This document shows, in pieces, positions 11,301 through 54,831 of a stretch of 64,000 nucleotides of DNA (within the stretch, counting starts at the first letter, position 1; the number at the start of each line of letters is the position of its first letter). The notes under the pieces were generated by a model. It ran no database searches. It saw nothing but the letters and a program-made list of their open reading frames with translations, and was not told the DNA's origin. The translations under genes and the position numbers were made by a program. Origin of the DNA: Ramazzottius varieornatus. Its lineage: Eukaryota; Animalia; Tardigrada. Location of the stretch: assembly GCA_001949185.1 (NCBI GenBank), contig BDGG01000001.1, forward strand, positions 2,311,324 through 2,375,323, in the 5' to 3' direction.

Positions 11301-14300
11301 GGAAGGCAGCCACTTAGCCAAGAAAATATCCCTCATCTCTCTGTTCCTGCTGAAGACATCTTTAGTTGAGAAATGTGTTTTGATGAGTAGAATTGTGGGG
11401 TCCTCTTCTACAAGTTTGCGTTTTGATGAATCTTCCTGCGCGAACGCAAAGCTGGGTGTGGCACCGTGAGAATCTCGCTGTGCTGTCTCCCCATATCAAC
11501 TTCAATATGACTAAACTTTTAAATATTTTCGAGCAGCCTTCAAAACGGTGCTCACGTAGCCCAGACTTCCACACTCGGAAATTCAGAAATAATGAAATCA
11601 TTTTGTGCTTTTTGAAGATTAAATTTTGGCTTGATATTTTACGTGGTCTTCCTTTCTAGAATCCGAAGCGGACATGACGGACTCGAACTCCACCAGCGGC
11701 ACCACGTCAAACCATGCTGTAGATGACGTTCACCTTTGTGGCATGTGCCAGCATGAATTCAAGTCGCTGGATAAGTTCCTGCTCCATAAAGAATCATGCA
11801 CGCCGACGAGCAGTCAGTCTGTGGAGTCCCCGCTCGTATCCAGGCCGCAAAGTCGCAACTCACAGTCACCCAACGAGAACCTTCCATCCACCTCCACAGC
11901 CTCCATTGTTACCAATAAGAACATCCAGGCCATGTTCTGTACCATCCAGCAACAACACTCGATTTTATTACAGTTAATTCAGCAACTTCTGCTGAAACTG
12001 AACACGAATGTATTGGGTGGTGGGATTAACAGACAACCAGGAAGTAGCAACATTCAGAGTCAACCTGCGGAAGCCGCACTGAACTCACCGGAATCAGGCA
12101 TTGGATCGGGATCAGACCCAGCCGGAAGAAGCGCACCGATGACTTGTCCTGTGGATGGACAGAGCTTTTCCGACCTGCGGACATTTTTGGACCATCTCCA
12201 AAGCCATAACGTAATTCTAGAAAATTGACTGATCTTATACGAATTTTTTTGGGAACAATATTATCCTTTTGGTTCCCAGAAAACGGTTTCCGTGCAGTCG
12301 GCCATTCGACAAGGTTCAGAGAAGCTCTCGAACCTCGCCAGAGAGCTGAACAATCTCGCGGGGCCTGGTTCATTAAGGACAAGTCGATCACCAGTGTCCG
12401 AAGCGAGGATGATTAACGAGCGCCGGAAGGAGTTGGAGGAAGAGGAGGAAGACCAGGTTGATGAGGACGGCGTGGATGATGTCAGCAAGGGTGCCGATGT
12501 GACACCGCTCGGACCTGATGGTCAGCCATTGGATCCTGCGTTGTACGTCGCTCTCCTACCTATCCCAGGTAGCAATGACAACTCGTGGGAACAGCTGATG
12601 GAGATCGTCGAGCCGACGGAGACAGCCAGACTGCAAGAGATGGTGGATCGTTACGACGACAAACGGGACCCTCATGAATGCGTTATTTGTAAGCGCGTGC
12701 TGAGCTGCAAGAGCGCTTTACAAATGCACTACAGGTGATAAGAGACTTTGTGCTAATTTTGAACACCCGTAGAAACTTCCATGCTCGGAAAAAGGCTACC
12801 CTAAAATTTGGTGTCTTTCTACGATATTTGAGAGTTCGCCAGATGAACTTGACAACATAGGTTTACTAAGTGGCGCACGTTTTCAATATTGATAACTGGA
12901 AGCGTGCGCCACGTTTCCTCGGGCTCGTTGTATAGTATGTAATTTGTGAAAAGACCTTTCACCGACAAGTCGGAAATTTACTCGTTGGATAGGCATTTCA
13001 CTGAAAAATCTAAATTTCGCTGTTTCCTTCAGGACGCATACGGGAGAGCGACCTTTTCGTTGCAAGCTCTGCCGGCGAGCCTTCACCACCAAAGGCAATT
13101 TGAAGACGCACATGGGTGTTCATCGCACAAAACTGATGGGTTCCTCCCCAAATCCACTGTCGAATACCCCATCCGAACCGATGTCGCGCATGTCGACCGA
13201 AATCATAGCGGTGGATAATCCGCAGAAAACGATGCCGTTGGGACCGTTGCCGAGTATGTATGATATTTCGGCTAGGCCATACGCCAGCATCCTCAACCCG
13301 GCACTGCGAAGTGGAATGCCGGGAATAGAATGGCCGCCGAATGCCACTCCGAACCGCCTGTCATCTTTCCAAAGCCTGGAAGCTTTGATTCAACGCACTA
13401 CCGGCGGAATGGGTAGGTGAAAATATTTTCTGAAGTTTTGTGAACCATTTTGGGCGGATTATCAAGTACATGCATACAGCGAACTGGTGGGATATAATGG
13501 TGAATCGGTATGTAGGTGCCTGATTAACCGACAGAGTTTTATTTGTGCTATGATTTTAGAGCGCATGCCGATGGATTTGTCATCGGCTCAAAACATGAAG
13601 GAAGTTAGGGATGGCGATGACAGTTTGTCGGGTAACAGCGATGGGGAGGATGAGCGTGAGGTGGATGAGGAGAGGAATGGATTATACGGTGGACAATCGG
13701 GGCACATAATAGAGTCATTGTTGGCCTCACAAGGCAGTCAACATCAGCACGGCACGGCTGGTGCACTTGACTTGACACCTCGCTCTCACTCGGCGACGCC
13801 CACTTCACAATCGACGGCAGGAGGAGATTTCAACGGATCGAAAATGTTGTCGTTAAACAGAAATCATAATACGACATGTCACGTCTGCTATAAGACCTTT
13901 GCGTGTCAAAGTGCATTGCAGATACATTTCCGCAGGTAAGCCATATTGCCATTGGCCTCTTCACTCTCTGACCCGGTCTCAATACTCTGCTTACTAACGG
14001 ATATCAATTAAATAATTCTCAAACGGTTCAGAAAAATCCAATAAAGTATTTTAGACAGAATCGGAGGCGGGCAAACACAACGTACAGGATCGTTGTCCGA
14101 AGTGGCGCACATTTCCCGCCAGTACCAATGATACCGTGCGCCACTTGAGATGACGATCTTGCACGTTCCGTTCGCCTGCCTTCCGAATATCCAGAAATAT
14201 CCGACGAAGTGATCGTTTTTCTTTTTATTGTAATTTTACAGTATATCAATTGACCTAACGATGTAATATATCGCGGCATTTCTAAATCATAGTCACCTTG

Positions 14301-15689: not shown

Positions 15690-15874
15690 GGTAAAGCATC
15701 TCGCACGAAAATGATTATTTAAGTAGCAGCCAAATTTGAAAACAAAATAATGTTCATGGAATCCAGACAAACAAACTCGACAAAAACGTTTTTCTCAGTG
15801 GCGCACGCTTCCGGCCATTCATACCTGAAATCTGCGTCACTTGGGAAAGTAAACTTGTAGAGTGTGGTTGTCGC

Positions 15875-25129: not shown

Positions 25130-26490
25130 GTGTCCTGTACGGTGGAGAGAACAGAATAGGAATTTCCACGCTGAATATCTATCGACACTCTCTGTTTAAA
25201 GAAAGAAAAGGCTCTAGATTCCCCCGTCACCTCTACAATGTTTCTTCCGACCGACTTAAACAGCTCCGTCGCACAGGGTCCCCATGGTCCGGGGTCTCCA
25301 GAACAACAGGACAGAACAGGAACTGGTTACCGATGTCCCGTTACTTCGTAATCTTTCTCTTTTCGGCGGCATCGGCAGCGAATCCGGCTTTGACCGTTGA
25401 CATGGCGAAGTTGGTAAGGGCCAGGGTGTCAACCACTGTGACGTCCCAGACGAGCTCGTTACCGTTCTTCCATGGGACTTGTGTCATACCGTCTGGTCGT
25501 CTCTTGTCCTTCCGGAAGATCCCTGGTGATTCAAGGATGGCCGGTATCTGGGCTGATGTCAGGGCACGTTTGAGCGACTCGTTTAGCGCGCTGTGTCGGC
25601 TGTAACGACCGCCACTAAACTTGCAGCTCGGCTTCGCTGTCCAAATCGGCTTGGGGAAGGATGTCGAGCACCAGTTGGTGTACGGAATGGATCCATGCCA
25701 AGAAGGCAGGAAGCGCGATCTCTTTTGTACGACGGATGCCTAATCCACCTAGATCGACCGGGAGTGTTGCTTGTCGCCACGGACCGGAAGTCATCTCAAC
25801 GTTCGTAATCTCCGCCAGACTTTCAAGAACCACCTCTTCGAACTCTTCCAATACCCACGGGACCTTCCAGACGGGAGAGCACCGAATGATGTAGAGGGAC
25901 TTGGGCAGACAAAGGCAGTTCTTTAGGAGGAAGAGGGCCTGGTGGGCAACCAGTTTAGTTTTGCCTGTACTAACTTGATCTTTCTTATTTTTACTCGGAC
26001 GACATCCTCCACACCCTCTTCCATCAGTAGAGCACCCAGCAGACTCAGGTCATTCCTGCAGGGGAAAAGGATACCTGGACAGGCGGTTGCTGCTGCTTCT
26101 TGGCTGGCTTAGCGTTCTTGAAGTGAACCACCGAACGCGAAGAGCTCACACTTGGATGGGTTCAACTCCAGTCCCACTTTCCTCCCTTCCACCACCACGT
26201 GCAAATCAAACAAGACACGACCACCGATGGTTCCATCGTCAAGATACCACACATTCAGTGGCGACTTTAGAGTCTTGGTGAGGCTCTCGATTACGAGGCA
26301 AAATAGAAGGGGCCCCAAAGGATCGCCCTGTTGCACGACCCTTGCGGACTCTATGGTGTGCTGACCGAAGAGAAGCTTTGAATTATGCCTTTAGGTCTGC
26401 CAGACGAAAGCGTGGTAGGCTGGCAAAGCTTCCTTGACAACACGGAGCAGAACGTCGCGGTGTATCGTGTTGAAAGCATTCCGGAAGCAC
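25130..26490 (-). mobile_element. Degenerate non-LTR retrotransposon (RT plus restriction-like endonuclease, CRE-like) in a p62-like intron
   Basis: RT motifs FRNAFNTIHRD, QQGDPLGPLLF, WYLDDG, GLELNPSKCE, GGLGIR; RLE motifs RH..LN, RPDG..PW..G..LVWDVT, SIDIQRGN; many frameshifts. Confidence 0.88.
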
Positions 26491-27542
26491 TATTGTACTT
26501 AGGTATCAATACGGAAATTGACGATTCGATTTCTTGATTGCAGGTGTCATTTGTGATGGCTGCGACGGAACTCGATATAAAGTATTAGGTACTTAACAGA
26601 CTCTCTCTCTCTCTCTCATTTCTTCCTGAATAAATCTTGACCTTGAATAAATCCCTTGAATGGACCTTGAATAAATCTTGTGTCCTTCTTCCAGTGCCTG
26701 GTCTGCAAGGATTTTGACCTGTGCGTCAAATGCGAGACTAAAGGAAAACACTACCAGCACACCATGTTGGTCATTCGCAAGCATCGCGATTTGAAGGTAA
26801 CGCCACCAACAGACAGTCGAGACTTTCGACCCTCTTCCGTTTTTTTCCGACGCTTTCGCCCCTGTGTAACTTAGGTGATCACTGGTTTTGATAACGAGAA
26901 TTTTTTTATCACAGAAAACGCTGTCTAAGATAGATCCCGACTTCAAGAGTCTCATCGTGGAAAAGCCCAAAACTAACGCTTCGGTCCTCCCAAATCCCAC
27001 CAAAAACCTCGCCGCCACGCAGCGAGATCTTACCGCTCTGGCCAATGGTATCAAGTCTATAAAAACCACTACCGCTAAGACTGCTACCCTGAAACCCGTG
27101 ACCAAGGCTACTACCACCACCACCAAGCAAGCCGACGCAATTCCTCCGGTCAACCCAGTGGTCCCAGTGGCAGTGGATGCCCCTCTCACCATCACCAGCA
27201 TCGAGCCAACTAAAGCTCAATCAGTGGTCGTCTCAACCGAGGACTTCCCTCCGATGCCACCGCCACCATTCTTAGCCACCGCGTCTTCAATAGCTGCCAC
27301 GAAACCAACGACCGCCACACACGTCGGGCCACCCAATGGCTCCTTTCAGTACAATCCATACAGTCCTTTCGGTGCCAATCAAATAAACGGTTTCTATATT
27401 CCCTCGGGGTTTGTCGAGAGCCCATTCTCACCATAAAATAGTAGCGGTAACGGCTCTGGCTCGTTTGGTGGATACGGTGGTCAGCCGCCGATCTACCCTC
27501 CTTCAGCTGCCGGTTATCCAAGTCGACAAAGGTTAGACTGGT

Positions 27543-27644
27543 TGCAAAATCAGGCTACGTCTTGCTATTCGAACNNNNNNNNNNNNNNNNNNNNNNNNNN
27601 NNNNNNNNNNNNNNNNNNNNNNNNAAGACGTAGCCTGATTTGCA
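27543..27644. repeat. Inverted repeat flanking the N-gap (probable small TIR element or assembly fold-back)
   Basis: tgcaaaatcaggctacgtctt before the gap is nearly the reverse complement of aagacgtagcctgatttgca after it. Confidence 0.5.
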
Positions 27645-28032
27645 TGGACGTATGTACACGCTAGCACACTGACCTAGTTTCATTTAAGCTTGGAAGACTG
27701 AGCAGAGAGCGAGCGACCAATGTCCTGTTGCACACGGCGTGACGTCACGGCATGTAAGTCGTAGCCGATGGCGCGAAACCGTTGCTTCGCGCCAAAAGTG
27801 GACGGTGGGCAGAGACTATCCATTTTTAGTGGCCGACCAGTGGTACTCGACCTAGTGACTCGGGTCTGCTGGGTGGGTGGCAGTTGTAGTGCGTAAATGG
27901 CTTCATCGTTCAAATGTGGCGTTCAGACCCGGTACAGAAAGCGAGGTCGATCGTGTAGCCGGGCTAAAATTCGATGGTAGTCGACGACCATCCACTTTTA
28001 GCCCATGCAGTACTTTGATTCGGTAGACTCAA

Positions 28033-31003
28033 ATGGATGGCCTTCGGCGAATCCATCATGAATGGAGACGCTTCCCCACCACCATGGTCACTCGCTACGA
28101 GCCCGGCAAGAAGAAGATGGCCGTCTTTCTGGTGATTGCGGATCACATTGATGGGCCGGAGCAAAAATCTGCAGGGGAATGGGCGAAACTCTTGCTGCGT
28201 TGGGCGGTAAGCGGTAATACGTTGTACTGTGGGTGCAAAAGGATATCACACAGTTCACGTCTTAGGTGGACAACTCCTGGGACATTGTGCAGGATGAATA
28301 CGGCGATCCGGTGGCGCCAATGCGGGCAAAGTGTCAAACTGGGGTATGTAAGACTATTAAACCGTCGTGTGGTACTGGTGATCTGACATCTGGTTCTTTC
28401 AGCGTTGGCGGCTCTAGAAGATGATTACGATGGTTTCGTCGGGAAGTACATTTTCAAAGCCTTGGCTCTATATCTAAAGGCGCCGGTCTATATGTGGAAC
28501 GGCGAAGTGGCAGGGGAACCGACCGTCGTGAGTAGAGGGACCATCTGAGAAATGGGGGTTCGTGGGTATGAGGTGGTACCGTTCATCATTCGACTGTTTA
28601 CAGTATAAGCGAAATGCCGTCCCGGGGCAAGACGAAGCGCACTTTTTATACTTTTCGGACGGCTTTGGCAGTCTGCGTATGACGGACCAGCTGCGGGGAC
28701 CGGTGTAGCTGATCCTGGACGAGGATGAGAACGGAGCTCGGCGCATCCGAAGCAAGACTCTCGGATGTATCGAAACGTCTCGTTCTCCACCGCCCCAAGG
28801 TCCGCTATCAGCGAAAACCCAGTCGGCCTTGACTGAATTGCAGGTACTGGTTCCGGATGCCTATAATGGGATGGTTGGTTCTGACCGTCCATTTCTAGGA
28901 AATTTACGGTATATGGTTCATGTTTTACAGTGTGTAACCGAACCGGAGCGTCGTGTGGCGAGGTTGGATGAAACAGTCGAATCAAAGACGGGGCTGTGGA
29001 TTAGTCCAGCCACATACAACAACGACACAGAGCTAGTGGCCGATTCTCCAGACGCTCTCTACCCGTCCATCAGCCCGGTGCGCGTCGACACTTTGCCAGA
29101 ACGCAACAAGCCGCCCTCTCTACCGGCGTCCCCGTAAGGCATTACCCCTAGTCCCCTAACGCCGAAAAAGATGCGGCCATTGGTACAAGATAACACTCTT
29201 ATAAAAACTCGAACATATCTGAGAGAGTTCTGTCCTTTACAGACGCCGATGGGCCAACTCTCTGTATCCACCTCAGTCATCCCTGTGGCCCCTGTGGTGG
29301 ACATTGAGCCGTCAACGTCTAGTGTCGTGCCAGATGTGCCGGTCACGACGCCGAAGCTGGCAACAGCGCGTTATAATGCACTCAACTACGGATGGGACCG
29401 TCACGAAGGTACAAACGGGTGCTCTAACGAGTGGGGCCACAATCCCTAGTGCCAATGAATATTGTATTGTCTTCTTGTAGACTGGCATACGATAACGTTA
29501 CATTGGCTTCGAAATGAAGGCCTGGCCTACTGCTGTGGAGCCCAACTAACCCCTTTAACCTCACCAAATCGAGCGGTGCAGACTCTGACGTGTAGTGCGG
29601 TTACGTTGAAGCTGTGCTGCGCACCGGGTGCCCTGAAGAAGTATAAGTGTGACACATCGATGCGCGCCCAACGTTACCATACTCTGACTAGTTTCGTCTA
29701 CTATGGAAGTGGTAAGGGATCTTGGCGAAAATCACGGCCGCGTTCACATAGCAAGCCATTACGGTGTGCCGTGTTTTTCCAGTGTTCGAAGCTGGCGATT
29801 TGCCGACAGACATGCCGGATAACGTGCGACTGAGTTTTTACAAGTCTTATACAGCCAACACAGTTGCCGTTCCCGTGAACCAGCCCATGTCGACTCAGGA
29901 GGAAGAGATGGTTTTCTATAAAGCCGCGGCCGAGCGGTTGCGATTGTCCATCAAGGCGTGCGATTATCTCGGCCCAGCTCTATTAGCGAAGATGGACAAG
30001 TGTGACGAACCGATCAAGACATCGATGGTGGTGACAAAGTTTCGACTCTAAGTCGGGAAAACACTTCAGTTGGCGGGTATCCCTGACGATAACGTCGTGA
30101 TCATTAATACGATGTATGTCGGAGACAAGCTGGGAGGCACACCAACCGAGCCGGACAACCTAGAACCATGCAAAGTGACATACGCGATCAACCGTAAGTG
30201 GTAGAACAGCTTGTGGTGAACTGCTTGTGGCACTCAAAGTGGATGGATCGCATCGACCATCCCTTTTTAAGACCATCGATGTTTGACAGCTATTCTCGAC
30301 GATGACCCACCGCAAGTAAGGGGCGAACCAACAGTAATACATGAAAGCCCGATGCAAGAGTTGCATTTTCCGTCATTGTTTACGTTGAGCACATCTATAC
30401 AATCCTGACTGAATTTCCCTTGCTGCAGGATCACGCGTTCTGGCGGTGAACCTCCGGTTCCACACGGAGGTGCCCGACATTCCGGGACTGCCTGCCTGGT
30501 TGTCCGTCAGTGGATTCAGCAAGGACAATTTTAAAAGTTCCAAGGGACTAGTATTCAACCGGGATGAATACTACACGGCTGTTCTGCCAACCTTACTAGC
30601 TGCGGCTCGTCGCGAGCTCGGTGGGGCCGCCAAGATTGTGCTCATCCACGACAATGCTCCATATCTGTCGCCGGATGCAGAGTCATGGATGAAAAAGTTG
30701 GCCAACATGTGCGGTGGGCCGCAGCCGGTGGTGCTCAAGTTGGTGAACGACAAGGGGAAGAATGAGATGAATAGACCGACGGCTCAGTTTCTCAACCCCA
30801 CTTACCAACGCAATCTGTCGGAGATGATGAAATGGCTCATGACATTTGTGATGAAACATCTGCCAGCGTCACAGTCGAGGCTGGAAAAGACTGGAGGCGG
30901 TTCGCCAGGTTGTGCAGTATGGTATGAACAACCCCGATGCCGATGGTCGTGGTTCCGAACGACCTTGCTGGACGCCAGGACTGGCCGATTCGTTCGTCAG
31001 TGA
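28033..31003 (+). pseudogene. Island gene A: spliced, degenerate, unknown protein
   Basis: Series of GT-AG introns (e.g. ~28844-28930, 30194-30289) linking protein-like segments, with in-frame stops and frameshifts; last exon contains KIVLIHDNAPYL. Confidence 0.5.
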
Positions 31004-31450
31004 TATTGTGGCTGGGTTTTCCTCTGGTCCCTCTTTTTCCAATTTGATTTTTGCTATCCGAGACTGCGGCGGGGTGAGGGCGCACACCAACCGCGGTTGG
31101 TAATTTTTTTTTGTTCAATTTGAGTAATTCCCTTTGATGTTTCATTCCTCTATAAAGGATGGTCGTCGCCGACCATCCCTTTTTAGTATGACATTTTGGT
31201 CATCAGCTACAATTTGGTTTAACGGTAAAGTAAAACTTCCGATTGCACAACTATCACTCCTGATAATTTTCCTACAGTAGTTTTAGTATTAAACGGGACA
31301 GGGAAACGTCTCGAAACGTAAAGAAAATCTAGGGAAAAGTATTCTCCTCGGCGACCGTCGCTTTAGCCTTCCACGCGGCGACCTTCTTCCCAGCGGCGCG
31401 CTGATGAGATCCGGGGGCGTCATCGCCGACGCTTCTTCCGGGGACGCTTT

Positions 31451-34400
31451 CTAAGCGGGTTTCTTGGCTGGCGACTTGGCCTTGGTCGGGGACGTCTGAG
31501 CTGCCAGTGCCGCCGTATAGGCACGGGTTTCCGTGGTGAAGCGCTCAAGATCAGCCGCCGCGGCATCGGTGTACCGCTACAAGGAAGAGTGCGTGACCGG
31601 TGAGATGACCGACAGACTGGCTATGCTGACCTACCTGCTTGGCGTCAGCCGGCAAAGCCGCCCACGCCGCCAGTGCTTCCGTCTTCAATTCGGCCGTCTT
31701 GAGCGTGGAATGTTTCTGTTGGTAGTGGTTCTTGAAGTGCGTATACGCCGCCAAGGGTCGACGAGGAGCCTATGAAGAATGAACACTATAAATGGATGGT
31801 CACGGGAGACCATCCATTTTTAGGATGAACAGTCCGACTTACATTGCCCGTGTTAGCCGGTCGTCCAACTTGCCCCTTGTTCTTCCGGTTGCGCTTGGCG
31901 CGAACCTTGAGGTTGGCCAACGAGGCCTGTTGCTCAGCGGTCAGCGGCGTATAATACCCCAAGGGCTGAATGGACAGCAGCATACGGGCGCGATTCCAAA
32001 TCTCCTGGCGCACGTAGGATGACATGCTCTTGACTCCTGGCCATGACTGTGTGTGATTGGTACTACCCGCTACAAACGGCAACATTAGAGGTCAAAGGGT
32101 ACTACCAGCGTCCAACTTACCGTTGCCCACACTTTGCTTGTTACGATCCTGACCTTTGGCTCGCTTCTTCAGTGCTTCCAGTCCGTCCACGCGCACGGGA
32201 ATGGACGTCTGCGCGACGAAGCGCTGGTACTGCGCACCGGCTGGTTAGACGGTCCAGCCTTTGCTGTTTCGGACTGCTTGCCTTTATCCGCTCGCCAAGC
32301 CTGTAAATCATAAAAATCATACGACGAAAACCAGCTAGGCACAATGGCAATGACACCGGCTTACCGCCACAACCTTTCGCAGCTCGTCCGCATCGGGGTC
32401 GTCACTTTGCCAGCCGAGAATGTCCGCCTGGGGTATCGGCACAAACTGGGCCATTTCAATCTACCACATAGATATATACACACTCGCTAAATATGGATGG
32501 ATGTCGGTGACCATCCCTTTTTAGCAACGCCTACCGTCTGATTCTTTTCTCGCTCCAGCTCCGCGGCAATGTCGTGTGGCAGTAGGACCTCGTCTGTTTT
32601 CGCCAGTGCATTAACTTCCGCTCGTGCCTGTAACCGTAAACTGCATTGCGCCGTCACATAGACGCTTAATGGTGCACCGGTTTGAACATACCTGCTCAAA
32701 GCGCCACCAGTCGGTCAAGAAGTGCAGCTGGACAATGGCCTGTTTGTTCTTTGACAAGTTCTGGTAGGTGCGACTCTTGCTGGACCATTTCGCCAGATAG
32801 GAGGAGAATGGGGCATCATCGCGGCGTGACGCGAAATAACTGGCCACATCGGGTGCGGGAGCCAGTTCATAACGACTGTCGAGAATCAGGGCTCGTTCGA
32901 CCTTGCCTGACTTTGATTGGCCAAATCGACACTTGTATTTGACCTAAGAAGAGACCGAGGTTAATAAAGTGTCTCCGAGGCCATACCGAGAACCATATAC
33001 TTGTCCTTACCTGCTGATTGGGTGGAGTGGTATTCAGGGCAGCGCTGAACGGCCACGAGTTCACGGAACAGTCGGTCAAGTCGCTAAAATTTGTAAGGCC
33101 ACTGACTGGCACGGCCGTCCCAGCCTCCACATTGTCCAAAACGTTGCCCTGTTCCTACCAACAAGTCCATCATATTAGCGTATTAGGGCACATAACTTGC
33201 TGAATACCGCCGTCACTGACCTGAAACACGGCCAAGTAACGGTCCAGCGTCTTCAACAGAGAGGCAGCTGTTGCAGGATTATCCTTCAACGCCTTCAGGA
33301 TCCAGGACCAGTTGTCGGCAAACGACTCCACTTCCGGCTCGAATCGCAAATGAAGAAGGGCCGTAGTACTGACGTCCGGACACATCATCCCGTGCAGGAT
33401 ACGCCGCTCGGATATGCCCGCCAACGAGTCTTTTGGTCGGACCAACTTGACCATGTCCGCTGCTGTTGGGTCGAAGGTCATCGTGACCTCCTCAGTCGCG
33501 TCGTCGTCCTTGTCCGTTGAGGCGGACACAGCACCAACACGCTTGCCGCGGAATTTTCGCGAGGACTTCGCACGGCGACCCTTTTTGGCGTTGGGTCTGT
33601 CTTGTCCGCTGGTCGCGTCTGTTGATGTTGCTGGGCTGCCGGAACGGCGTGGGACGAAGACGGAACCGTCATCATCTGGACTTGTTCCTGGACACCGGCC
33701 AGTGCGGGGTTTCCAGCCGTGGTGTTGGCCGCAGCATTCTCGGCCGACTTCTTCGCGCTAGGCTGCAAATAAACATGTACTGTAGCATCCACAACAGACT
33801 ATAAAGGGATGGTCATCATCAACCATCCATTATTCGGCATACCTTGAGAATATCCAATTCAATGTCGGCCTTGGCCAGGTTGTGTTCGGCCACTACCTTA
33901 ATCATCTTGGCCTCGAGCCGATCCCACGGTTCTTGGGCCTTGTGCAACTTGTGAAAGTACAGCGCGAGACTGCCACCTTTCAAGAGCATCGGCCCCATCT
34001 TAACCTCGTCGTCTTTCAGGCCCACGATGGTCCCTTGTTCCAGTTCTTTCAACAACAAACGGAGGTGGGGATAGACGTTGTTGGGCGCGGTGGCCAGCCA
34101 GCGGAGGGCCGCCATCATGTCGCTGTCCCACACCTTCTTCACCTACAACGATCGCCTGCGACGGACAAGGTACCAAACATGATATCGCACAAACGATCCG
34201 ACATAGTCAGACGGGCATATTCCGCTACTTACGTTCGGTTCAAAAGCAGACAGATAACGCTTTGTGCGGGTAAACAAATCAGCTGACACATCCCAGGGCT
34301 CGTAATCCACATTGGCCATCTGCTGCGACGGTCGCCACTCCACCAAACGAAATCGGAAGATCTTGACCCATTGGTACACGGTGGCAGCCGTGGCACGCGT

Positions 34401-35507
34401 ATGGTCAAAGTTGACAACGTTGGCGTAGACCTCGCGTTCTGCGGCCGGAAAGTCATAGACGATAAAGACCTGCAAATACAAATAGACGCTATTAATGGAT
34501 GGAATCCAGTGACCATCCAATTTTAGCGAACCAGGCTTGAGTTGCATACCGGTACTCGTGTTCTCACGGTCCAGTACCGATCAGGCAGCTCACGGCGTCG
34601 CGGGTCCTTCTCACGACGTTCCGCCACCATCTTCCTAGCGGCTAGACCATGATTGCCTACAAGCACATGTTACAATGCAATATTCACAACGGGTTTCTCG
34701 ACTTGCACGGGCAACTTACCGCTGGAGACCTTCACGAACCAAACTAGGCGAGCTTTGGCTAACCGTCTTCGCAGCACATCGATCGGCTCGCCGTGGAAAT
34801 ATGACTTTTTCTGCTTGACATCGGCCGGATCGGTGATGGTCTGCCGATCCGGCCTGCCAAGGTGTCAAACTGGAACGAATCTGTCAGCGCATCTTCCACC
34901 TCTTGCGCCCGCTGGAAGACATCCGTTCCCGCCTGTTCCGCTGCAGCCTTGTTGTGGCCAATACCCGGGATAACAACGTATGCCTTGTGCAGCGGAGTGC
35001 CATGAGGGCTCTTGTCCTGAATGTCGGCGACCTCTCGGTCGATCTTGGACTGGATCAAGTCTCTCACCAGACCATCGTCTTCAGTGGCATTGAGCAGCCG
35101 ATGTAGCGGAAAGTCCTTTGGTATCCCGCCAACTAGCAAAAAAATCACAACAACGGATTAGATTGCATACCGAGAACCGCAATGTTTCAAACTTACACAG
35201 ACGGTGCTGGTCAAACACCACATAGACGTTCTGTGAAATGATCCCGCCGGAAGTGGTGGCCTATAATCCAACAGACGTAAGAACACTAAAAATGGATGGA
35301 TATCCAGAACGATCCACTTTTAGCAACGTATAATATAATACTGACCTCCGTGCCATCGCTCAATGTATCAAGCAGAGCCCGACGTCGAGGACTAGGGTCC
35401 TTCGCTGGAGACTTGCGAGGTGACTGGGAGCCGCGAGGACCACCCGAGCGTAACGCGGACATTCCGGCAGGAACGGCTGGAACAAAGACACATTCAGACT
35501 CGTCCAT
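31451..35507 (-). pseudogene. Island gene B: ParB/Srx-like N-terminal domain plus C-terminal HMG box (about 13 exons, at least 2 apparent frameshifts)
   Basis: Splicing introns 34719-34657 and 34549-34470 gives FVKVSSGNHGLAARK...RVPVFIVYDFPAAEREVYANVVNFDHTRATAATVYQWVKIFR; splicing 31842-31770 and 31634-31577 gives NAPRRPLAAYTHFK...LKTAELKTEALAAWAALPADAKQRYTDAAAADLERF (HMG box). Confidence 0.7.
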
Positions 35508-35832
35508 AAACTCTTTAGACCCCAAGCTTCTCGTCAGTACGTCTACTGTCCATCCGCATGAGTCACATCACTCTATATATTAGGCCATACAGCATACTGT
35601 ATCGCCACGTACCCCGGTGAGGAGACGGCAGACAAAGCCAATCTGGAACAGCTGACTATCCCGCACCTGCAGCAGAGTCACGTTACGGACAGACGGAGGA
35701 TGAAGGTCCACTAAAATGGGATGGTCATCGAGAGCCATCCAATTTTAGCCAGACACAAAAAGTGTTATCAACAATCAACTAATCAACCAACAAGGTCTCA
35801 CTGTATCGGTACAATGATCGAACTCATATCAG

Positions 35833-35952
35833 TGACGTCACATTCTCACCGGCGCATAGGGTTGTACTATGACGTCACATTCTCACCGGCGCATAGGGTT
35901 GTACTATGACATCACATTCTCACCGGCGCATAGGGTTGTACTATGACGTCAC
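35833..35952 (+). repeat. Tandem repeat, 37-bp unit x 3.2
   Basis: Unit TGACGTCACATTCTCACCGGCGCATAGGGTTGTACTA starts at 35833, 35870, 35907, with a partial copy at 35944. Confidence 0.95.
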
Positions 35953-36269
35953 CATAATTTTTTCTATTATACCATCTCCATAATGCACAGACACTCAATA
36001 CATCTTCAAAACGCATACCAACGGCCGCCATTTCCGGGTGTCATGGAGAGATGGCGCCACACATCGCATGTTCGCGGCTTGGGTTGCTTATAAGTTTGTG
36101 CAGTTCCTGTGGGGCTCAGTTTCTGTGGAATTTATCATCAGCCGAAGTTGACGATGACCGAAACCTGCTCGTCCGACATCGCTGTAAGACTGTTCCTTCC
36201 TATCGAACATGAATTTACAACCAAGAGCTCTACAAAAACAAACTGTACTTGGTCGTTTCCCTAAGTGGC

Positions 36270-39107: not shown

Positions 39108-42100
39108 TTGTCTGTTCTTCATAGTCTGAAGAATGTGCGAAGTCAGTCGTTCAAGAGAAAGCCGTCGTCAGATGACCGTTTGAGTGAGACACTGTCCATT
39201 TCCGGCAGTGACTTCAGCCTACGCACAGTGGAGAATGTGGACGATCAGTTCACCAACAGTCTGGTGCGACAAGTCCGCTTTCGGTTTTACGAAAGATTCT
39301 CCCTGCAGACCATCGAGACCAAGTTCGAGCTGAATGATATTCAACTTCTCACCACATCCGAAACTTTAGTCAACCGCATCCTCGCAGCTGAACACTGCGA
39401 TGTAGAAAAGACCTGTTTATGGCTAGCACACCTCCTAGCATGGCGGAAACAGTTCGGTATCTACGAGCTATCGTTAGATGAATTCGACCAAACGATTCTC
39501 GACCTCCGGCCGTTAGAGTTTGTCCATGGAGAACATCAGGACATTTTGGTATGCTGTGTGGCAAAGTTGTTAAAGATCACGGACGCCATTGGAGTGGTCA
39601 GAGCCAATCGGTTATTAGTCTATCATTTTGAAAACCATTTTCGACATGGCGCAGCGCGGAACATCACCCTGATTGTGCATTTCGCCAGAGTGCCGTCGAA
39701 AGTGTGGAACAAGCTTAGTTACAAGCATCTCTTGAATGAGTTAATGTGTGGGTGTGTCTACTTCCGGTATCCGCAGTATTGTGAAAAGGTGCTCTTCCTT
39801 GATTGGGAAACGCGACTGGACAATCGGGCGATCTACCCCATGGTCTCAAGGGACTGGCCCAATGAAGTCAAGGCGAAAGTGACGTTTGTGGACCATGAAG
39901 ACGTTTCCAAGTAGGTAAATACACAACCCGCAAATACTGTATCACCTATTCCAAATTAGAACAAATTGCAAGCTCGTAAACGAACTCAGCAAGATCGCTT
40001 TTCCAAGTGGCGCACGCTTTCGCTCAGTGACACCGAAAACGTGAGCCACTCTTGTCCACTCTTCAAAACAGTCCTGTCGGGTTCGTTTGCCGTGCTCCCA
40101 ATTTTTGCTTCGAGTAAGCAATTGATTGCTCACTTGGGAGTGTTTCGTTTAGGACAGCTCCTGAAAAGCATGCTTCGCCGGAGGAACTCTGTCTACAGAG
40201 CGTACTCTTCCTTCTGTCGGAACCTCCGCCTTCGACTTTCGCAACTCAAGACAAAGCAAGTGCCGATGGTGTTGTGAGCGAGAGCGGTACTGACAGCACA
40301 CCGATTAATGTTTCAAGTTCTCGACTTCCGGGTGTCAGCTTCTCCAACGAGACGGAGACATCTGGCACGGCAGAGTCCGGTGCGACGCCCAGTATAATAT
40401 CGCTCCCTTCCGGTCTATCCACGGTCCCGCCTAGTAGGAGTATGACATCGCGATCGGAAACTGATCGAGAACATTCGGTAGACCTCTTTGTGCCGTCATC
40501 TGTCCAGGACCGACCATTGAACAGCCGTCTTCAGGTAGATTCGAGCTTCCGTTCGCTTGAATCAATTCGTTACTTGGGTTGGCTATTCGTCTGTTTTTGG
40601 TGGTAGGATAAAAAAGATTCGTCTAGTGAGCCGGGACCGAAACGCGACACGGACATCTCGCTCGGCGAAAGGGAAGCATACAGCGAACCGGGTAAGCTAC
40701 CTGGTCAGAGCAGCGACGGCAAAGCTGGAGCCAATACCTCACCGAAGAAGAGCCTGCCGAAGTTCAGGGAGAGAAAGTCCAACGAAGTGCCCGACAGCAG
40801 AACATTGCTCAAGAACAGCCGAGAAATCACCAAGAGTAAGGTGTCCATAGCGAGCTCCGCTGGCTTCTCCCTTCAGGCGATTCCCCCCGGAAGTCTGCCC
40901 ATTGGTGAGTTCACCGATGTCACAGACAAGAACATTTTACCGCTGATCTCGCACTCGACTTTGGGTGACAGCGAGACACGTAAAGGATCTACAAAAAAGC
41001 AGGAAGATCCGCAAGACAGTAAGAGTTACGAGGACTCTGAGTTTTCCGCAACGGAGGTTCGACCTGGCTCAGTGAAGGACAGAATCAGTGTGATGACCAA
41101 CCAGAGTTTAGCCACCAACACCCGACAGGCCCCGTCGCCCAACGGTTCTCTGAAGGGCTGTTTGCTATCGAGAGTCATGAGACCGAAAGAACAAAGCTCC
41201 AGGAAGGAGAAAGAGGTGGAAAAGACAAGCAGCGGAACTTCACTACGGAAGAAGCCTTCTCCGGCGGAAATGCTCTTTACGGTGGCGCCCTTCGCCGAAG
41301 GCATAGTGCATCATGGCGGCACGCCGCACCTGCCATCGGCGGAAAAACCTCAGCTGGATTCACCATCCCAAGGCAAAGAACCGAAAAAAACCACGGACAA
41401 GGATACCGGAGAAGTTCAGCCACAAAACAGCAGTGAGAAGAGCCTTCGCAGAGAGGCTTTGTTTCAACGACCTGCAACAGCTCCTGATGGAAACGGTAAC
41501 AGTACCACGAGGCCGTTGAGTTCTTTCCGTTCAGTGCAGTCTGATATCGGTTCCAAAAACAGTTCCAAAGACCTTCCCAGACGAGAAACGAACCGAAGTG
41601 GCTTCCATCCGGGGAGTTATTTTGGAGTCCACCAGGAAAAAGAACAGAGAGAAATGTCTGATGAATCGAGTTATGGACGTTCTGATGATGATGATTTTTA
41701 CCATCAGGACCTCAACGGTAGACCTGTCCCACAGCTGATCCACGATGTTCCTCCACAGTTCTCCGATACTAATGGGCACATGTCCGATCGCTCATCCGAA
41801 GGAGGGCGGCAAAACAGCAAGAACGCGGCGGTTTCGAACGCAGGCGCAGAACCTTTGCCGCCGAACCCGTCTACCTCTCCAGCATCATCGGCAACCTCAC
41901 GTACATCCGTTCATAGAATACATCGCACTCCTGAGCTTAGTTCCTACGCCGAAAACCGTCACCAAAAACGAGCCGAAGGTGAATAAATCCAGAAAAACTT
42001 GTCAAGATCATTAATCGCTTGTCCTATTATCGATATCATGAATTCATGATGAAACTGATTTACCTGGCAGTCACTCGGCTTCTTCTTTCTCCATTTTCTA

Positions 42101-49713: not shown

Positions 49714-51192
49714 GGCTATTGAACCGTGGAAAGTCGCCCGAAGCTGTCGCACAAGGAGCCGGAAGTGGAAAACCCCAAAGGACTCAAGGAGTGATCGCGT
49801 GTACAGAGGTTTGGAAGAACCAGCCACGCTACGCGCTTGGGGTAACTGTGAAACCAGAAGGAACTCTAGGTAGAGAAAACGTTTAGTCCTACGAAACGTT
49901 TCTCTTGCGAATTTTTGGTTGTACACTGAGACAGTACCTACAGGCTACGCCGCTACAGCAGTTACAGAGGCATGAAACTTGGCGATCAGAAGGCTTCAAA
50001 TTCAGTCCGGTATGTTGGCGGTATATAACCAATGTTTACACGCAGGTAAAACAGCAGGGGTCTGCATAATTTTAATAATCCGCTCTCTGGTCGCAGGCAG
50101 AGAGTCTTGGTGTTGTGGCTATGAGCTGGCTGGTAGGGAGTTACCCGCATATTGAAACTGTACGAGATCCGGTAAGCGGAGTTCGTCACAACCAGCGGTG
50201 CCCAGTTTTTCATTCCGTCGTACGCAGAAACCTTTCTCGCTACGAGTAGAAATAATATAGAAACAACAAACGTGTCAGACAGAGGCAACTCGTTATAGAA
50301 AGCGAGGTCCCACGCATGGTTCTCTGATACTATAGGTGGCGCACGTGTACTCTGGTTGAGAAGTTCCAAAGAGGCTGGGTAGGACCACAATTCTTTTGCT
50401 TCGAAGATGGGTGTCTTTTTTCTCCAAGAATTACCTGGACTCTAGCGGCAGGATATTAGAGTGCCCTAGCGACATGTGGGATAGAAGATCGAGCCCATAC
50501 GGGATGACGTGCTTCTGCGCTGTGCACGGATCACCGCCGGTCCGAAGAATGTCTGTACTATAGCTGGGAGACCTTTTTTGCTCCTCATCCACGTATTTTC
50601 TGTTTCTTAGTTTGAAGTAATTACTCTCGCCTGCAGCAGAACTTCTCATCCAACATGGGCACTTCTCTCGGAAGCTAGCAGTTTCAATGTGGACACTGGG
50701 CTGTTTTACTGATTAAATGGAGTCCAAAGACTTAGTGGCCCATGAATGGACCTCACAGTTGGCGGCGGAAGTACTCTGCGCAGCCACTTCAAATCTCACT
50801 GCTGTTGTCCGAAGAATCATAAGCGCGGAGTTCATTGTCAAAGGAACGCTAGTTCTGGGCTCCAAACGTCTTTCATGGCTGGCAGGGTAATCAATTTTTT
50901 TTCGAGTCACTGGTGCCCGGCGAACAACCAGCCAGTGACACCGAAAAGGTGCGCCCACTTGGGAAAGAATCTTTCCAAGTTTGTTTGCCGAGCTGCCAAA
51001 CAGACTTTTGATGCTTTTTTGATACTTTGCTTTTTGATACTAAAATCCTGTTTTAGGCGGATAATAGCGCGAGCTTGCCGCTTTTTCGGTTACCGCGCTA
51101 TCGGGACCATTGAACAGCAGATTCACTCGTCATCGTCTCTCTTCTCGAAAGCTTCATCTCACCGTTTTCGGTGTATTGCGCCTCTGTACTTC

Positions 51193-52897: not shown

Positions 52898-54831
52898 TCT
52901 ACCTTCATGCGTGACAAAAACACGTTGCGGTGGAAAACGTGACTGTAGGTTTTATATTTTAGGGCTACATCCGTGTGAAGATACGGCTCTGTGGCTGTCC
53001 ATTAGCGGAGGACCTGCAGATGGTTCGCCGTGAAGTTGACTGTGAGATGACAAGCTATACGTATGTTTATTGTTCATCTTGGTCTTTTGTCCCATGACGA
53101 GACTGAAAAGGCACAGACTTTGCACAACGGGTCGCGACTGGATAGAGCTAGCGGTTTGTTCATCACGACTGTGAAATAATTAGACAAACCATTTTTGCAC
53201 CATCTCGCATTGTTATGCTTGTTGTGACGAGCTCGATGGTCACTGTCTCATACGACTGACTTGTTCGTTGTGGTCAGTTACAACAACATGGGAAAACCTA
53301 TTGTTTGATACTCATAGTTCAGTAATGTTATATACAATCCATTCCAGCCAAGTTGTCGTCGCTTAATCAAAATTCGCTTCTTCTGACCAAATGATGTTTC
53401 CGCCTCTGCCAAACGTTTTATCATTAATTCAGCTCTCTGGAACCGTTCGAGAACAAGGAAGGCCGAGTTGCTATTGTGGAGCAGAAGACAGATGGGGAAA
53501 GTTCGACATCTGTTTTCCTGCCCGACGCAAAAGCATGCGCGCAAGTTGATCGGAGGCGGCACTTCAATTTTCATATTTTAATTTCACATTTTGCGTCGTT
53601 TCAGACTCTCCGACCAGAAACTTTCTTTCAAAACACTGTGAAAATAGTCTTCTTCCAAAGTGCGTTTATGAAACATCGTTTGTTTTAACGGAGTGAGAAC
53701 TCGGGAGTTTTATTTTACGGCTACAAGCAGAGGGAGTGGTCGTGCCAAAACGACCTAGTTTCAAGATAAGTTTCCAAAGCGGTCTTCTGCCTGAATTCTT
53801 TTAAACCAATTGCATCATAGAGAGTACAAGTGGAAGTGTCGAAAACGAGTTGGCAGGGGACATGAAGTATAGATCTAAATTTTGAACGGGTAATGAGAAT
53901 TCGCGAGGAACAACTTGGCTGGAGCAGGCTGTAGTAAGGACCGTAGGGTGGCTTGTTAAAACATTATAGCATGCATCAGATTTCTTTCATACCTTTTAGT
54001 GAGTTTTTACTACTTTTTACTGGTACGTTTATTACACTACGAGCGTAGTCTGGGACGTAGGGCAAATGAAATGGAACCAGATTCATGTCTGAAGTGGCGC
54101 ACGTTCTCGTTGCTATGAGCTCGAAGTGTGCCTCACTTTAGAAAACAATCTGGTTCAGCTCATTTGCCCACGTCCCGTATGTTGAGCCATAACAAAATGT
54201 TCAGATTGGAAGCGAAACATGGTGGATTAACGATATTAAAAACTAAATAATACCATCGTACTGGGAAATTAACAAATTTCATTCTTCTGCTCTGTGGGTT
54301 GATAGACAGAACCGGCACTAGTTTCTCAATACCGTATCTGCAATCTGTGCACCGCGGACGGAAAGGCCCACGCAAAGCAGCGCAATTACCGGCTTCTCTT
54401 CATCGATACGAAATTATCCGCAGTGACTTCTTCGACTGTTCGGCCTACTGCGCATGCCGGCCGCAAAGCCAGGCACCATGTGTACGCAATCTAGTGATAT
54501 TCAAAACATCGTAAAGTGTCAGTAAAGTAATTGGTCTCGCAACGCAATGGTCAGTGGCTCGCTTATGACACACTTTCCGGTGCCGCGGACGAGAAAATAT
54601 CGAGGTGTTGACTGATGCATGACCGAGTTGAACCCGGTGACAGTGTGTTAATCACCCCGGAGTACCATGCCACGATGTTCTTTGACGCTAATGAGTCTAT
54701 ATGGCCATGAATATTACAAGCCGAATAATTCGGATATAAAAGATGCAATCCTATTTCGGTATAACAAACATCGCCTCTCACATCGTTTTCTCATCTCCCT
54801 AGTAAAACTTCGGAATCTGTCTTCAACAACC

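What the first reader, a model, noticed from the sequence alone, without database searches (positions are those of the whole stretch)
27792..35748. Eleven 38-bp palindromes with conserved arms and an invariant 8-bp spacer length but unrelated spacer sequences
Spacers are gggcagag, agtcgacg, tggttctg, tcgcatcg, cgtcgccg, cacgggag, tgtcggtg, catcatca, atccagtg, tatccaga and catcgaga. All are exactly 8 nt and all differ, while the GGATGG/CCATCC cores and the A/T-tract CTA...TAG ends are largely kept. Conserved geometry with a free centre points to a dimeric protein site rather than a copied MITE. The arm-8-arm layout also recalls loxP/FRT tyrosine-recombinase sites, but non-matching spacers would block crossover, which favours binding or loading sites.
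Basis: seen in the sequence. Interest (0 to 1): 0.88.

Follow-up and report, generated by a model that had tools for sequence, protein, structure and literature searches.

The report
Private palindrome array in tardigrade introns
A low-copy two-gene repeat in the tardigrade Ramazzottius varieornatus carries its own set of 11-12 evenly spaced 38-bp palindromes, hidden in introns and untranslated regions, that look like binding sites for a paired (dimeric) protein, but the binder and purpose are unknown.

Summary
Eleven 38-bp palindromes lie at the stated coordinates, all with exactly 10 bp between GGATGG and CCATCC.

- **Conservation:** arms are 76-83% alike between sites. The central 6 bp and the flanks are at random level.
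- **Host:** the window is eukaryotic (Ramazzottius varieornatus).
- **Setting:** the sites belong to an ~8.3-kb unit with two convergent, spliced orphan genes. Three damaged copies exist in the genome.
- **Exclusivity:** the palindrome family occurs nowhere else in 55.8 Mb. A 12th site survives only in the C3 copy.
- **Position:** RNA contigs place six sites inside GT..AG introns. The others lie in flanks or UTR-like parts. None is in proven coding sequence.
- **Spacing:** more even than chance (p about 0.01).
- **Pairing:** the arms match a consensus but do not covary, and there is no sense-strand G·U bias. Half-site sequence is conserved, not pairing.

Best reading (0.4): cis-acting sites for a sequence-specific dimeric DNA binder.

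Not excluded: a hitch-hiking intron-colonising mini-palindrome, RNA hairpins, or recombination sites.

Neither a ParB domain nor a DDE transposase domain could be confirmed. Only an HMG box was detected.

Other first-stage readers of the scan noted this same stretch, and noted a different, pervasive intron palindrome family elsewhere in this genome.

The parts
27792..27829 (.). palindrome 1 (degenerate cores GGACGG / CTATCC), about 240 bp upstream of the gene A ATG
   Evidence: The C4 copy has the consensus cores here.
27964..28001 (.). palindrome 2, 32 bp upstream of the gene A ATG
   Evidence: The right arm is truncated in the C4 copy.
28861..28898 (.). palindrome 3, inside gene A. A candidate 87-nt GT..AG intron (28844-28930) contains it, but this is not verified by RNA and the frame also stays open through it.
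30233..30270 (.). palindrome 4, inside the verified + strand intron 30194-30428
   Evidence: joint 30193>30429, GT..AG, runs X4 and X7
31149..31186 (.). palindrome 5, between the two convergent stop codons and covered by RNA contigs. Its centre is inverted in the C4 copy.
31786..31823 (.). palindrome 6, inside the verified - strand intron 31770-31842
32487..32524 (.). palindrome 7, inside the verified - strand intron 32461-32534
33799..33836 (.). palindrome 8, inside the verified - strand intron 33763-33842
34489..34526 (.). palindrome 9, inside the verified - strand intron 34470-34549
35286..35323 (.). palindrome 10, inside the verified - strand intron 35261-35345
35711..35748 (.). palindrome 11, upstream of the first gene B exon (5' leader or promoter)
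27642..35760 (.). Repeated unit shared with partial copies on contigs C4 and C3 at 92-98% identity. The right end is undefined because only the window copy reaches beyond 34608. The first 147 bp (27642-27788) match, in the C4 copy, the last bases of an exon plus an apparent intron of a neighbouring ABCG transporter gene.
28033..31003 (+). Gene A, an orphan. Its last exon, 30429-31003, corresponds to the annotated protein GAU88064.1 (RvY_00829). The window copy has TAA at 30049-30051 where the C3-type reads CAG.
31451..35462 (-). Gene B, an orphan with at least 14 introns. It ends in an HMG box and a basic Ser/Pro/Lys-rich tail. The window copy has a deletion of about 805 bp near 32240, an in-frame stop, and frame breaks near 33577 and 34840.
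31635..31769 (-). Exon encoding the first half of an HMG box
   Evidence: PF00505, E 5.6e-4, below the gathering score, partial
35833..35952 (.). Three 37-bp tandem repeats, each carrying TGACGTCA or the one-base variant TGACATCA, upstream of gene B. The same octamer lies at 27741-27748 upstream of gene A. These are probably promoter elements.
   Evidence: D4, I21

Best explanation
The palindromes are cis-acting recognition sites for a sequence-specific protein that binds DNA as a dimer. Each half-site is an A/T tract plus GGATGG(TC). The two half-sites are held one fixed distance apart around an unread centre.

They belong to one lineage-specific two-gene unit and were multiplied within it. 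They survive only where 38 extra bases do no harm: introns, leaders and the 3' intergenic stretch. The result is roughly one site per 0.8 kb.

Shown:
- existence of the sites and their fixed geometry;
- exclusivity to this unit;
- the contrast between arms, centre and flanks;
- absence of pairing covariation;
- intronic position;
- even spacing.

Inferred:
- that a protein binds;
- that it is encoded by the unit. The gene B product, with its HMG box and basic tail, could read the A/T tracts.
- what binding achieves. Options are regulation or insulation of the pair, tethering or partition, or assembly of a recombination or transposition complex.
For: - **Significance:** 11 sites against about 2 expected.
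- **Exclusivity:** 12 of 15 exact core matches in the 55.8-Mb genome lie in the three copies. The other three lack the A/T ends and any homology to the unit. All hits with up to 1 mismatch to a 20-position pattern lie in the copies.
- **Conservation contrast:** arms 0.76 and 0.83 identity, centre 0.33, flanks 0.25.
- **Consensus explains the pairing:** 81.3% of cells pair, against 80.4% when partners are shuffled among sites (163 of 500 shuffles reach the observed value). Sense and antisense pairing are alike, 157 against 154.
- **No single half-sites**.
- **Fixed geometry:** 10 bp between the cores in 12 of 12 intact sites.
- **Position:** six sites lie inside spliced introns, while eight other introns of the same gene have none.
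- **Spacing:** coefficient of variation 0.46, p = 0.010; with the 12th site p = 0.004.
- **Decay pattern:** the copies deviate from the consensus at different sites. The ancestral sites were therefore closer to the consensus, and today's copies decay neutrally.
- **Possible reader of the A/T tracts:** an HMG box in gene B.
Against: - No binder is identified. Both genes are orphans, and Pfam finds only a partial HMG box below threshold.
- All three copies are damaged, so any function is probably past.
- The same genome has a different, pervasive intron palindrome family built the same way: conserved arms, fixed-length spacer, variable centre. A generic, possibly mobile process can therefore make such things.
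- Twelve sites of 28 specified bases must have been copied, which is what a mobile mini-element does.
- No cross-species comparison was possible.
Confidence: 0.4

Rival explanations
1. The palindromes are a tiny intron-colonising palindromic repeat (MITE-like or introner-like) with no function for the unit. Selection for its own mobility kept the arms, which act as transposase ends, and the spacing, while the centre drifted. It is private to this unit for one of two reasons: it spread only locally, or the unit came by horizontal transfer from a genome where this family is common.
For: - The unit has sharp 38-bp boundaries with random flanks.
- Sites occur only in non-coding positions.
- They must have been copied.
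- R. varieornatus has its own pervasive palindrome family of the same build, GTGGCGCAC-N25-GTGCGCCAC: 6 in this window against 0.02 expected, none of them inside the unit. Other notes of the scan, unchecked here, place that family mostly in introns.
- The unit is 3-8 points richer in G+C than its surroundings.
- The genes have no detectable relatives.
Against: - There are zero copies outside the unit in 55.8 Mb.
- No target-site duplications are present.
- There is no presence/absence polymorphism among the three copies.
- Density is one site per 0.75 kb, several times that of the host's own family.
- Spacing is more even than random.
- At 38 bp it is shorter than any MITE I know of (from my own knowledge).
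- The window copy carries a fragment of a host ABCG gene, so the unit has duplicated inside this genome.
Confidence: 0.25
2. The sites act as RNA hairpins in the pre-mRNAs and leaders of the two genes, for example as a handle for a splicing, export or decay factor.
For: - All 12 sites may lie in transcribed, non-coding RNA: six in introns shown by RNA, the others in leader or 3' parts covered by RNA contigs.
- A palindrome gives the same hairpin from either strand.
- The DNA hairpins fold better than shuffles in most cases (z from -2 to -7).
Against: - There is no covariation.
- There is no sense-strand G·U tolerance.
- Stems carry uncompensated mismatches, and folding energy is only -2.7 to -11.7 kcal/mol.
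- Eight introns of the same gene splice without a site.
- The distance to the splice sites varies: 6-39 nt from the donor.
Confidence: 0.1
3. The sites are recombination sites of the lox/FRT kind (arm-spacer-arm). With different spacers, each site pairs only with its own counterpart in another copy. Alternatively the terminal pair (sites 2 and 11, which share a central TCGA) inverts the unit.
For: - The geometry is 14-16-bp arms around 6-10 bp.
- Sites 2 and 11 are the best long-range inverted pair and bracket both genes (I2).
- The centre of site 5 is exactly reverse-complemented in the C4 copy while the flanks stay collinear.
- RNA-type runs X4 and X7 hold a contig that starts inside site 11 and is preceded by the reverse complement of the C4-type sequence right of site 2. 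That is the junction expected from an inversion (table 7). The inferred junction is absent from the assembly.
Against: - No tyrosine or serine recombinase domain was found in any exon.
- Spacers differ between sites within a copy.
- The DNA run X1 shows no such junction.
- The contig may be only the C4 paralogue of site 2 laid on site 11 (26 of 29 bases alike), or a reverse-transcriptase template switch.
- The deletions that distinguish the copies do not end at palindromes, apart from one next to site 1.
- A flipped hairpin loop needs no recombinase.
Confidence: 0.1
4. This is a ParB/parS-like partition module, as proposed by another first-stage note. Gene B would carry a ParB/sulfiredoxin-like domain that loads at the palindromes.
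For: - By eye, a stretch spanning exons 34720-34864, 34550-34654 and 34233-34469 recalls the ParB motif around a G-x-H-x-L-A-A segment. This rests on my own knowledge, not a test.
- The palindromes are dispersed like chromosomal parS sites.
Against: - PF02195 finds nothing in a six-frame search of the whole genome at E up to 10, although it rings in 11 of 14 control genomes.
- Pfam on each exon finds nothing.
- The ESM Atlas gives no such lead.
- The domain, if real, is split over three exons and broken by a frame shift, so these tests are weak.
Confidence: 0.05

Closest known systems
Papillomavirus E2 binding sites (ACCG-N4-CGGT), and the EBNA1 sites of Epstein-Barr virus oriP
   Same: Both have dyad-symmetric half-sites, a spacer of fixed length and free sequence, many copies on one selfish replicon, and binding by a dimer encoded by the replicon itself. 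This comparison rests on my own knowledge.
   Different: Here each half-site is much longer (14-16 bp). The sites are spread evenly through the introns of chromosomal genes. No replicon, binder or episome is known.
loxP / FRT sites of tyrosine recombinases
   Same: The layout is arm-spacer-arm, with roughly 13-15-bp arms around a 6-8-bp spacer.
   Different: Spacers differ from site to site. No recombinase gene was detected. DNA rearrangement at the sites is not shown.
Bacterial parS / ParB
   Same: Palindromic sites are scattered over the DNA they serve.
   Different: parS is 16 bp without a free spacer. No ParB domain could be confirmed.
Introner-like elements and the internally symmetrical (stw)introns of Hypoxylaceae (PMC8469720; PMC9860276)
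   Same: Repeated, symmetrical sequence is found in spliceosomal introns without flanking duplications.
   Different: Those are whole introns that carry their own splice signals, occur in scores to thousands of unrelated genes, and are similar along their full length. Here a 38-bp core sits at variable positions inside otherwise unrelated introns and also outside introns, and only in one unit.
The GTGGCGCAC-N25-GTGCGCCAC palindrome family of the same genome
   Same: Conserved arms, fixed spacer length and a variable centre. Other notes of the scan, unchecked here, describe it as largely intronic.
   Different: The arm sequence is unrelated. The spacer is 25 bp rather than 6-10 bp. It is genome-wide instead of private to one unit.
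Bacterial REP/BIME elements
   Same: Short imperfect palindromes of about 35-40 bp in non-coding DNA, bound by proteins (PMC2817692).
   Different: REP elements are bacterial, occur in hundreds of copies genome-wide, and are associated with RAYT transposases.

Membership tests
MITE (miniature cut-and-paste transposon) | terminal inverted repeats | tested here: met
   14-16-bp arms
MITE (miniature cut-and-paste transposon) | target-site duplications flanking each copy | tested here: not met
   The four bases outside each site are unrelated left and right, and flank identity is 0.25. A TA inside the CTA..TAG ends cannot be told apart from the palindrome itself.
MITE (miniature cut-and-paste transposon) | many dispersed copies sharing internal sequence | tested here: not met
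   There are no copies outside the three paralogous units. Centres are at 0.33 identity.
Introner / introner-like element | the repeat makes up the intron and supplies or fixes its splice sites | tested here: not met
   The core lies 6-39 nt from the donor and 16-158 nt from the acceptor. The rest of each intron is unrelated.
Introner / introner-like element | copies in many unrelated genes | tested here: not met
   Only two genes of one unit carry it.
lox/FRT-type recombination site | inverted arms around a short spacer of fixed length | tested here: met
lox/FRT-type recombination site | partner sites with identical spacers | tested here: not met
   All 12 centres within a copy differ. Only paralogous sites share them.
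lox/FRT-type recombination site | a cognate recombinase gene | tested here: inconclusive
   No Pfam hit in any exon. The genes are orphans and were searched exon by exon only.
lox/FRT-type recombination site | rearrangements with breakpoints in the sites | tested here: inconclusive
   The centre of site 5 is flipped in the C4 copy. One ambiguous RNA contig junction was seen. None was seen in DNA run X1.
ParB/parS | a protein with the ParB N-terminal domain (PF02195) | tested here: inconclusive
   No hit at E up to 10 in the six-frame search or exon by exon. The candidate region is split over three exons and frame-shifted.
Dyad-symmetric site for a dimeric DNA-binding protein | conserved half-sites, fixed spacing, free centre, no need for pairing | tested here: met
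Dyad-symmetric site for a dimeric DNA-binding protein | a protein that binds it | not testable with these tools
   Needs a gel shift, DNA pull-down, DAP-seq or ChIP.
Structured RNA hairpin | compensatory changes that keep the stem | tested here: not met
   Covariation score is 0.099 against 0.092 in shuffles. There is no sense-strand bias.
Tc1/mariner-type DDE transposase (gene A) | DDE_3 domain | tested here: not met
   PF13358 gives 78 hits in the genome but none in the unit. hhalign against the genome's own DDE_3 alignment gives probability 4%. The ESM Atlas gives only a weak lead at 0.88.

The most novel reading that the evidence does not exclude
The unit is, or was, a chromosomal selfish module that encodes a dimeric DNA binder and hides about a dozen evenly spaced copies of that binder's site in its own introns and leaders. 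This would be an animal counterpart of viral and plasmid tethering or partition systems (E2/E2BS, EBNA1/oriP, ParB/parS). Alternatively it is a set of heterospecific recombination sites that lets copies exchange or invert modules.
Probability: 0.1. Interest if true: 0.85.

Novelty: new variant of a known kind. Interest (0 to 1): 0.55.

Why it matters
If the sites are bound by a product of the unit itself, this would be a rare animal example of a repeated genetic module that carries both a DNA binder and a dispersed array of its sites, with the sites placed in introns so that coding sequence is spared.

The same tardigrade genome also holds a pervasive, differently built intron palindrome family. 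Fixed-geometry palindromes may therefore be a general and undescribed feature of tardigrade introns, and their origin (mobile, regulatory or structural) is testable.

If the sites are only hitch-hiking repeats, they would mark horizontal transfer of the unit from a genome where the family is common.

Tried and rejected
- **Bacterial readings** (integron attC array, terminators) were rejected. The window has short GT..AG introns confirmed by RNA joints, and the genome is that of Ramazzottius varieornatus.
- **Genome-wide MITE or introner** was rejected by three pattern searches and by inspection of the outside hits.
- **Viral relatives:** 17 IMG/VR contigs each have a single exact site, which is chance level.
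- **Gene identification was tried by eight routes:**
  - Pfam on 20 exon pieces found only a partial HMG box.
  - A ParB_N six-frame search found nothing.
  - A DDE_3 six-frame search found none in the unit.
  - phmmer of the last exon of gene A against 1.84 billion representatives found only itself and two low-complexity hits.
  - Two word-index searches with gene B exons found nothing, or only the window's own fragment.
  - Two ESM Atlas look-ups gave weak or no leads.
  - hhalign against the genome's own DDE_3 alignment gave probability 4%.
  - AlphaFold2 on the single sequence P0001 gave pLDDT 32, which is unusable, so no fold search was run.
- **Paralogues of either gene** in the genome were not found beyond the three copies. 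The one weak hit lies in an unrelated membrane-protein gene.
- **Tc4-type CTNAG/TNA and TA target duplications** were considered. The left and right trinucleotides are reverse complements, not direct repeats.
- **YY1/Pho, GLI and FokI-like resemblances** of the arms were considered from my own knowledge and dropped. The resembling positions are not the conserved ones.
  - Read laying could be used once on 6 kb, so sites 1-3 have no RNA evidence.
  - Complex prediction was not used, because no binder is claimed.


Full report
**1.

A search for GGATGG, ten free bases, then CCATCC, with up to two mismatches, gives 12 hits in the 64-kb window against 1.9 expected. The twelfth, at 50479, is chance. 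Seven sites are exact against 0.03 expected. The repeat finder groups all eleven into one family.

An ungapped alignment of the eleven sites plus a twelfth from a paralogous copy (A2) shows ten invariant and nine nearly invariant columns. These lie in two 14-16-base arms: an A/T tract with CTA..TAG ends, plus GGATGG / CCATCC.

Pairwise identity between sites is as follows:

| Part | Identity |
|---|---|
| Left arm | 0.76 |
| Right arm | 0.83 |
| Central six bases | 0.33 |
| 30 bases on either side | 0.25 (random level) |

The unit is therefore sharply bounded at 38 bp. The distance between the cores is 10 bp in every intact site.

- The innermost two bases on each side are half-conserved, so the free centre is nearer 6 bp than 8.
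- One central column is C in 10 of 12 sites.

**2. What surrounds the sites.**

The window is eukaryotic. The exact protein of the last exon of the plus-strand gene is GAU88064.1 (RvY_00829) of the tardigrade Ramazzottius varieornatus. The assembly has 55.8 Mb in 200 contigs.

The sites lie in a unit of about 8.3 kb (27642 to at least 35760). This unit has two further partial copies, on contigs C4 and C3, at 92-98% identity.

The unit holds two convergent genes. Gene A is on the plus strand, ATG at 28033 and stop at 31003. Gene B is on the minus strand, about 35462 down to 31451.

Contigs of RNA-type public runs laid on 29850-35840 show 13 CT..AC joints, which are minus-strand GT..AG introns, plus one plus-strand GT..AG intron.
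- Six palindromes lie inside these introns: 30194-30428, 31770-31842, 32461-32534, 33763-33842, 34470-34549 and 35261-35345.
- Eight other introns of gene B have no palindrome.

The remaining sites are placed as follows:
- Site 3 lies in a candidate 87-nt intron that I could not verify.
- Sites 1 and 2 lie upstream of the gene A start.
- Site 11 lies upstream of the first gene B exon.
- Site 5 lies between the two stop codons, in a stretch covered by RNA contigs.

No site is in proven coding sequence.

**3. The family is private to this unit.**

Genome-wide, 12 of 15 exact core matches lie in the three copies. The other three lack the A/T ends and any homology to the unit. With a 20-position pattern, every hit with up to one mismatch lies in the copies. 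The nearest outside look-alike is a different A/T-rich repeat.

Paralogous sites share their centres, as expected from duplication of the whole unit.

The C3 copy keeps about 805 bp that the window has lost near 32240. That stretch contains a twelfth palindrome, with its own centre, inside what reads as another intron.

There is no presence/absence polymorphism of sites among the copies.

**4. All copies are damaged.**

| Copy | Damage | Calls |
|---|---|---|
| Window, gene B | the 805-bp deletion with an in-frame stop; frame breaks near 33577 and 34840 | 19, 20 |
| Window, gene A | TAA at 30049-30051 where the C3-type reads CAG | 15, table 3 |
| C4 | lacks 28206-30941 and everything beyond 34608 | 12 |
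| C3 | spans only 29147-33111, with further gaps | 12, 31 |

The copies deviate from the arm consensus at different sites. The ancestral sites were therefore more uniform, and present copies are drifting.

In C4 the first 147 bp of the shared stretch read as the end of an exon plus an intron of a neighbouring ABCG transporter gene. The window copy therefore arose by duplication within this genome. The unit cannot be shown to be a transposon: no terminal repeats or target duplications were found, and the right end is undefined.

**5. What the sequence pattern says.**

If the twelve sites simply descended from one ancestor and drifted, arms and centre would have diverged alike. They did not. So either the arms were selected, or the copying process preserves arms only.

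The arms do not covary. 81.3% of arm positions pair, but 80.4% still pair when the right arms are dealt out among the sites, and 163 of 500 shuffles reach the observed value. The mismatches in the A/T tracts are uncompensated.

Counting G·U as a pair gives the same total for the transcribed and the opposite strand, 157 against 154. The hairpins are weak to moderate, -2.7 to -11.7 kcal/mol as DNA.

What is conserved is thus each half-site's sequence and the spacing, not the ability to pair. This is the signature of a dyad-symmetric protein site.

Two further points fit the same reading:
- Single half-sites do not occur.
- The sites are spaced more evenly than random placement would give. The coefficient of variation of the gaps is 0.46, p = 0.010. 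With the twelfth site in place, p = 0.004.

**6. The genes give little help.**

Pfam on twenty exon pieces finds only the first half of an HMG box (E 5.6e-4, exon 31635-31769). It is followed by a Ser/Pro/Lys-rich basic tail. Nothing else was detected.

The ParB reading proposed by another first-stage note is not confirmed:
- PF02195 finds nothing in the whole genome in six frames at E up to 10.
- The exon-wise scans are also blank.
- These tests are weak, because the candidate region is split over three exons and frame-shifted.

My own guess that gene A is a Tc1/mariner-type transposase also failed:
- DDE_3 has 78 hits in the genome but none in the unit.
- hhalign against the genome's own DDE_3 alignment gives probability 4%.
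- The ESM Atlas lead is weak.
- phmmer against 1.84 billion representatives finds only the protein itself.
- The single-sequence fold is unusable.

**7. Signs of DNA dynamics at the sites.**

These signs are all weak.
- The ten-base centre of site 5 is the exact reverse complement in the C4 copy, while the flanks are collinear. This is what a flipped hairpin loop looks like.
- Site 6 in C3 has lost seven central bases, and site 2 in C4 has lost part of its right arm.
- A 508-bp difference between the window and C4 ends within a few bases of site 1.
- Two RNA-type runs of one study hold a contig that starts inside site 11 and is preceded by the reverse complement of the C4-type sequence to the right of site 2. 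That is the junction an inversion between sites 2 and 11 would give (table 7). The inferred junction is absent from the assembly and from the DNA run. The contig may instead be the C4 paralogue laid on site 11, or a reverse-transcription artefact.

**8. Context from the rest of the genome.**

Other notes of this scan report a pervasive, different intron palindrome family in this genome. I checked this in my own window. GTGGCGCAC, 25 free bases, then GTGCGCCAC occurs six times against 0.02 expected, again with variable centres, and never inside the unit.

Fixed-geometry palindromes with free centres are therefore not unique to this unit in this animal. That raises the weight of a mobile or hitch-hiking origin, including arrival of the unit from a genome where its palindrome is the common one.

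Against that reading stand five points:
- the total absence of the family elsewhere in the genome;
- the high density (one site per 0.75 kb);
- the even spacing;
- the lack of target duplications;
- the evidence that the unit has duplicated inside this genome.

**9. Verdict.**

The feature is real, highly non-random and unusual.

The best-supported reading is an array of sites for a sequence-specific dimeric DNA binder, belonging to a lineage-specific two-gene unit that is now decaying (confidence 0.4).

The rivals are:

| Rival | Confidence |
|---|---|
| Functionless intron-colonising mini-palindrome | 0.25 |
| RNA hairpins | 0.1 |
| Recombination sites | 0.1 |
| ParB/parS version of the binding idea | 0.05 |

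The closest known things are the E2 and EBNA1 site arrays of viral episomes for how it may work, lox/FRT for geometry, and symmetrical introner-like introns of fungi (PMC8469720) for where it sits. It is a member of none of them.

Noticed in passing
window 12870-12912, 14102-14144, 15798-15840, 40007-40049, 54094-54136, 59239-59281: A second, unrelated palindrome family, GTGGCGCAC-N25-GTGCGCCAC: six copies against 0.02 expected, with a fixed 25-bp spacer and variable centre. The copy at 14065-14181 has 46-nt arms. Other notes of the scan call this family pervasive and intron-confined genome-wide.
   Followed up: partly
window 27540-27644: A run of 51 N (27575-27625) is flanked by a perfect 17-nt inverted repeat (27547-27563 and 27625-27641), directly left of the unit's left border. 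It may be an unassembled long palindrome or the end of another element.
   Followed up: no
window 35722 (table 7): RNA-type runs X4 and X7 hold a contig that joins the reverse complement of the C4-type sequence right of palindrome 2 to the right half of palindrome 11. The inferred junction is absent from the assembly and from DNA run X1. It may be an inversion isomer, an unassembled copy, a paralogue mis-laying or a template switch.
   Followed up: partly
window 30954-31487: The C4-type variant of the 3' region between the two genes, including palindrome 5, has a contig depth of 177-318 in the RNA-type runs, against 14-25 for the window-type gene A. The internally deleted C4 copy may therefore be the more strongly expressed one. 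Contig depth is a poor measure of expression.
   Followed up: no
window 35833-35952 and 27741-27748: Three 37-bp tandem repeats, each with TGACGTCA or the one-base variant TGACATCA (CRE-like), lie upstream of gene B. One TGACGTCA lies inside a 24-bp palindrome upstream of gene A.
   Followed up: no
L016 4500-7212 (contig C4): An ABCG-type ABC transporter gene abuts the C4 copy. The first 147 bp of the shared unit match, in C4, the end of one of its exons plus an apparent intron. The window copy therefore carries a fragment of that host gene.
   Followed up: partly
window 33454-33457 and the C4 copy: The C4-type sequence has 35 extra bases here (seen in DNA run X1 and in X9). On the gene B strand they begin GTAAGG and contain GCAG near the end. 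This may be an insertion or a very short intron absent from the window copy.
   Followed up: no
contigs C1:5173562, C1:5317458, C7:700350 (L052, L055, L053): An A/T-rich repeat, seen in three copies, contains a look-alike: AAATGGTTGG, then ten bases, then CCATCCAACT. It has the same spacing but lacks the CTA..TAG ends, and the spacer is nearly the same in all three copies (one base differs).
   Followed up: partly
window 25615-26336 (-) and 26680-26874 (+): A reverse-transcriptase fragment of a non-LTR retroelement and a ZZ-type zinc-finger ORF lie left of the unit. A gene whose N-terminus looks VIT/vWA-like starts at 36209, to the right of the unit.
   Followed up: no
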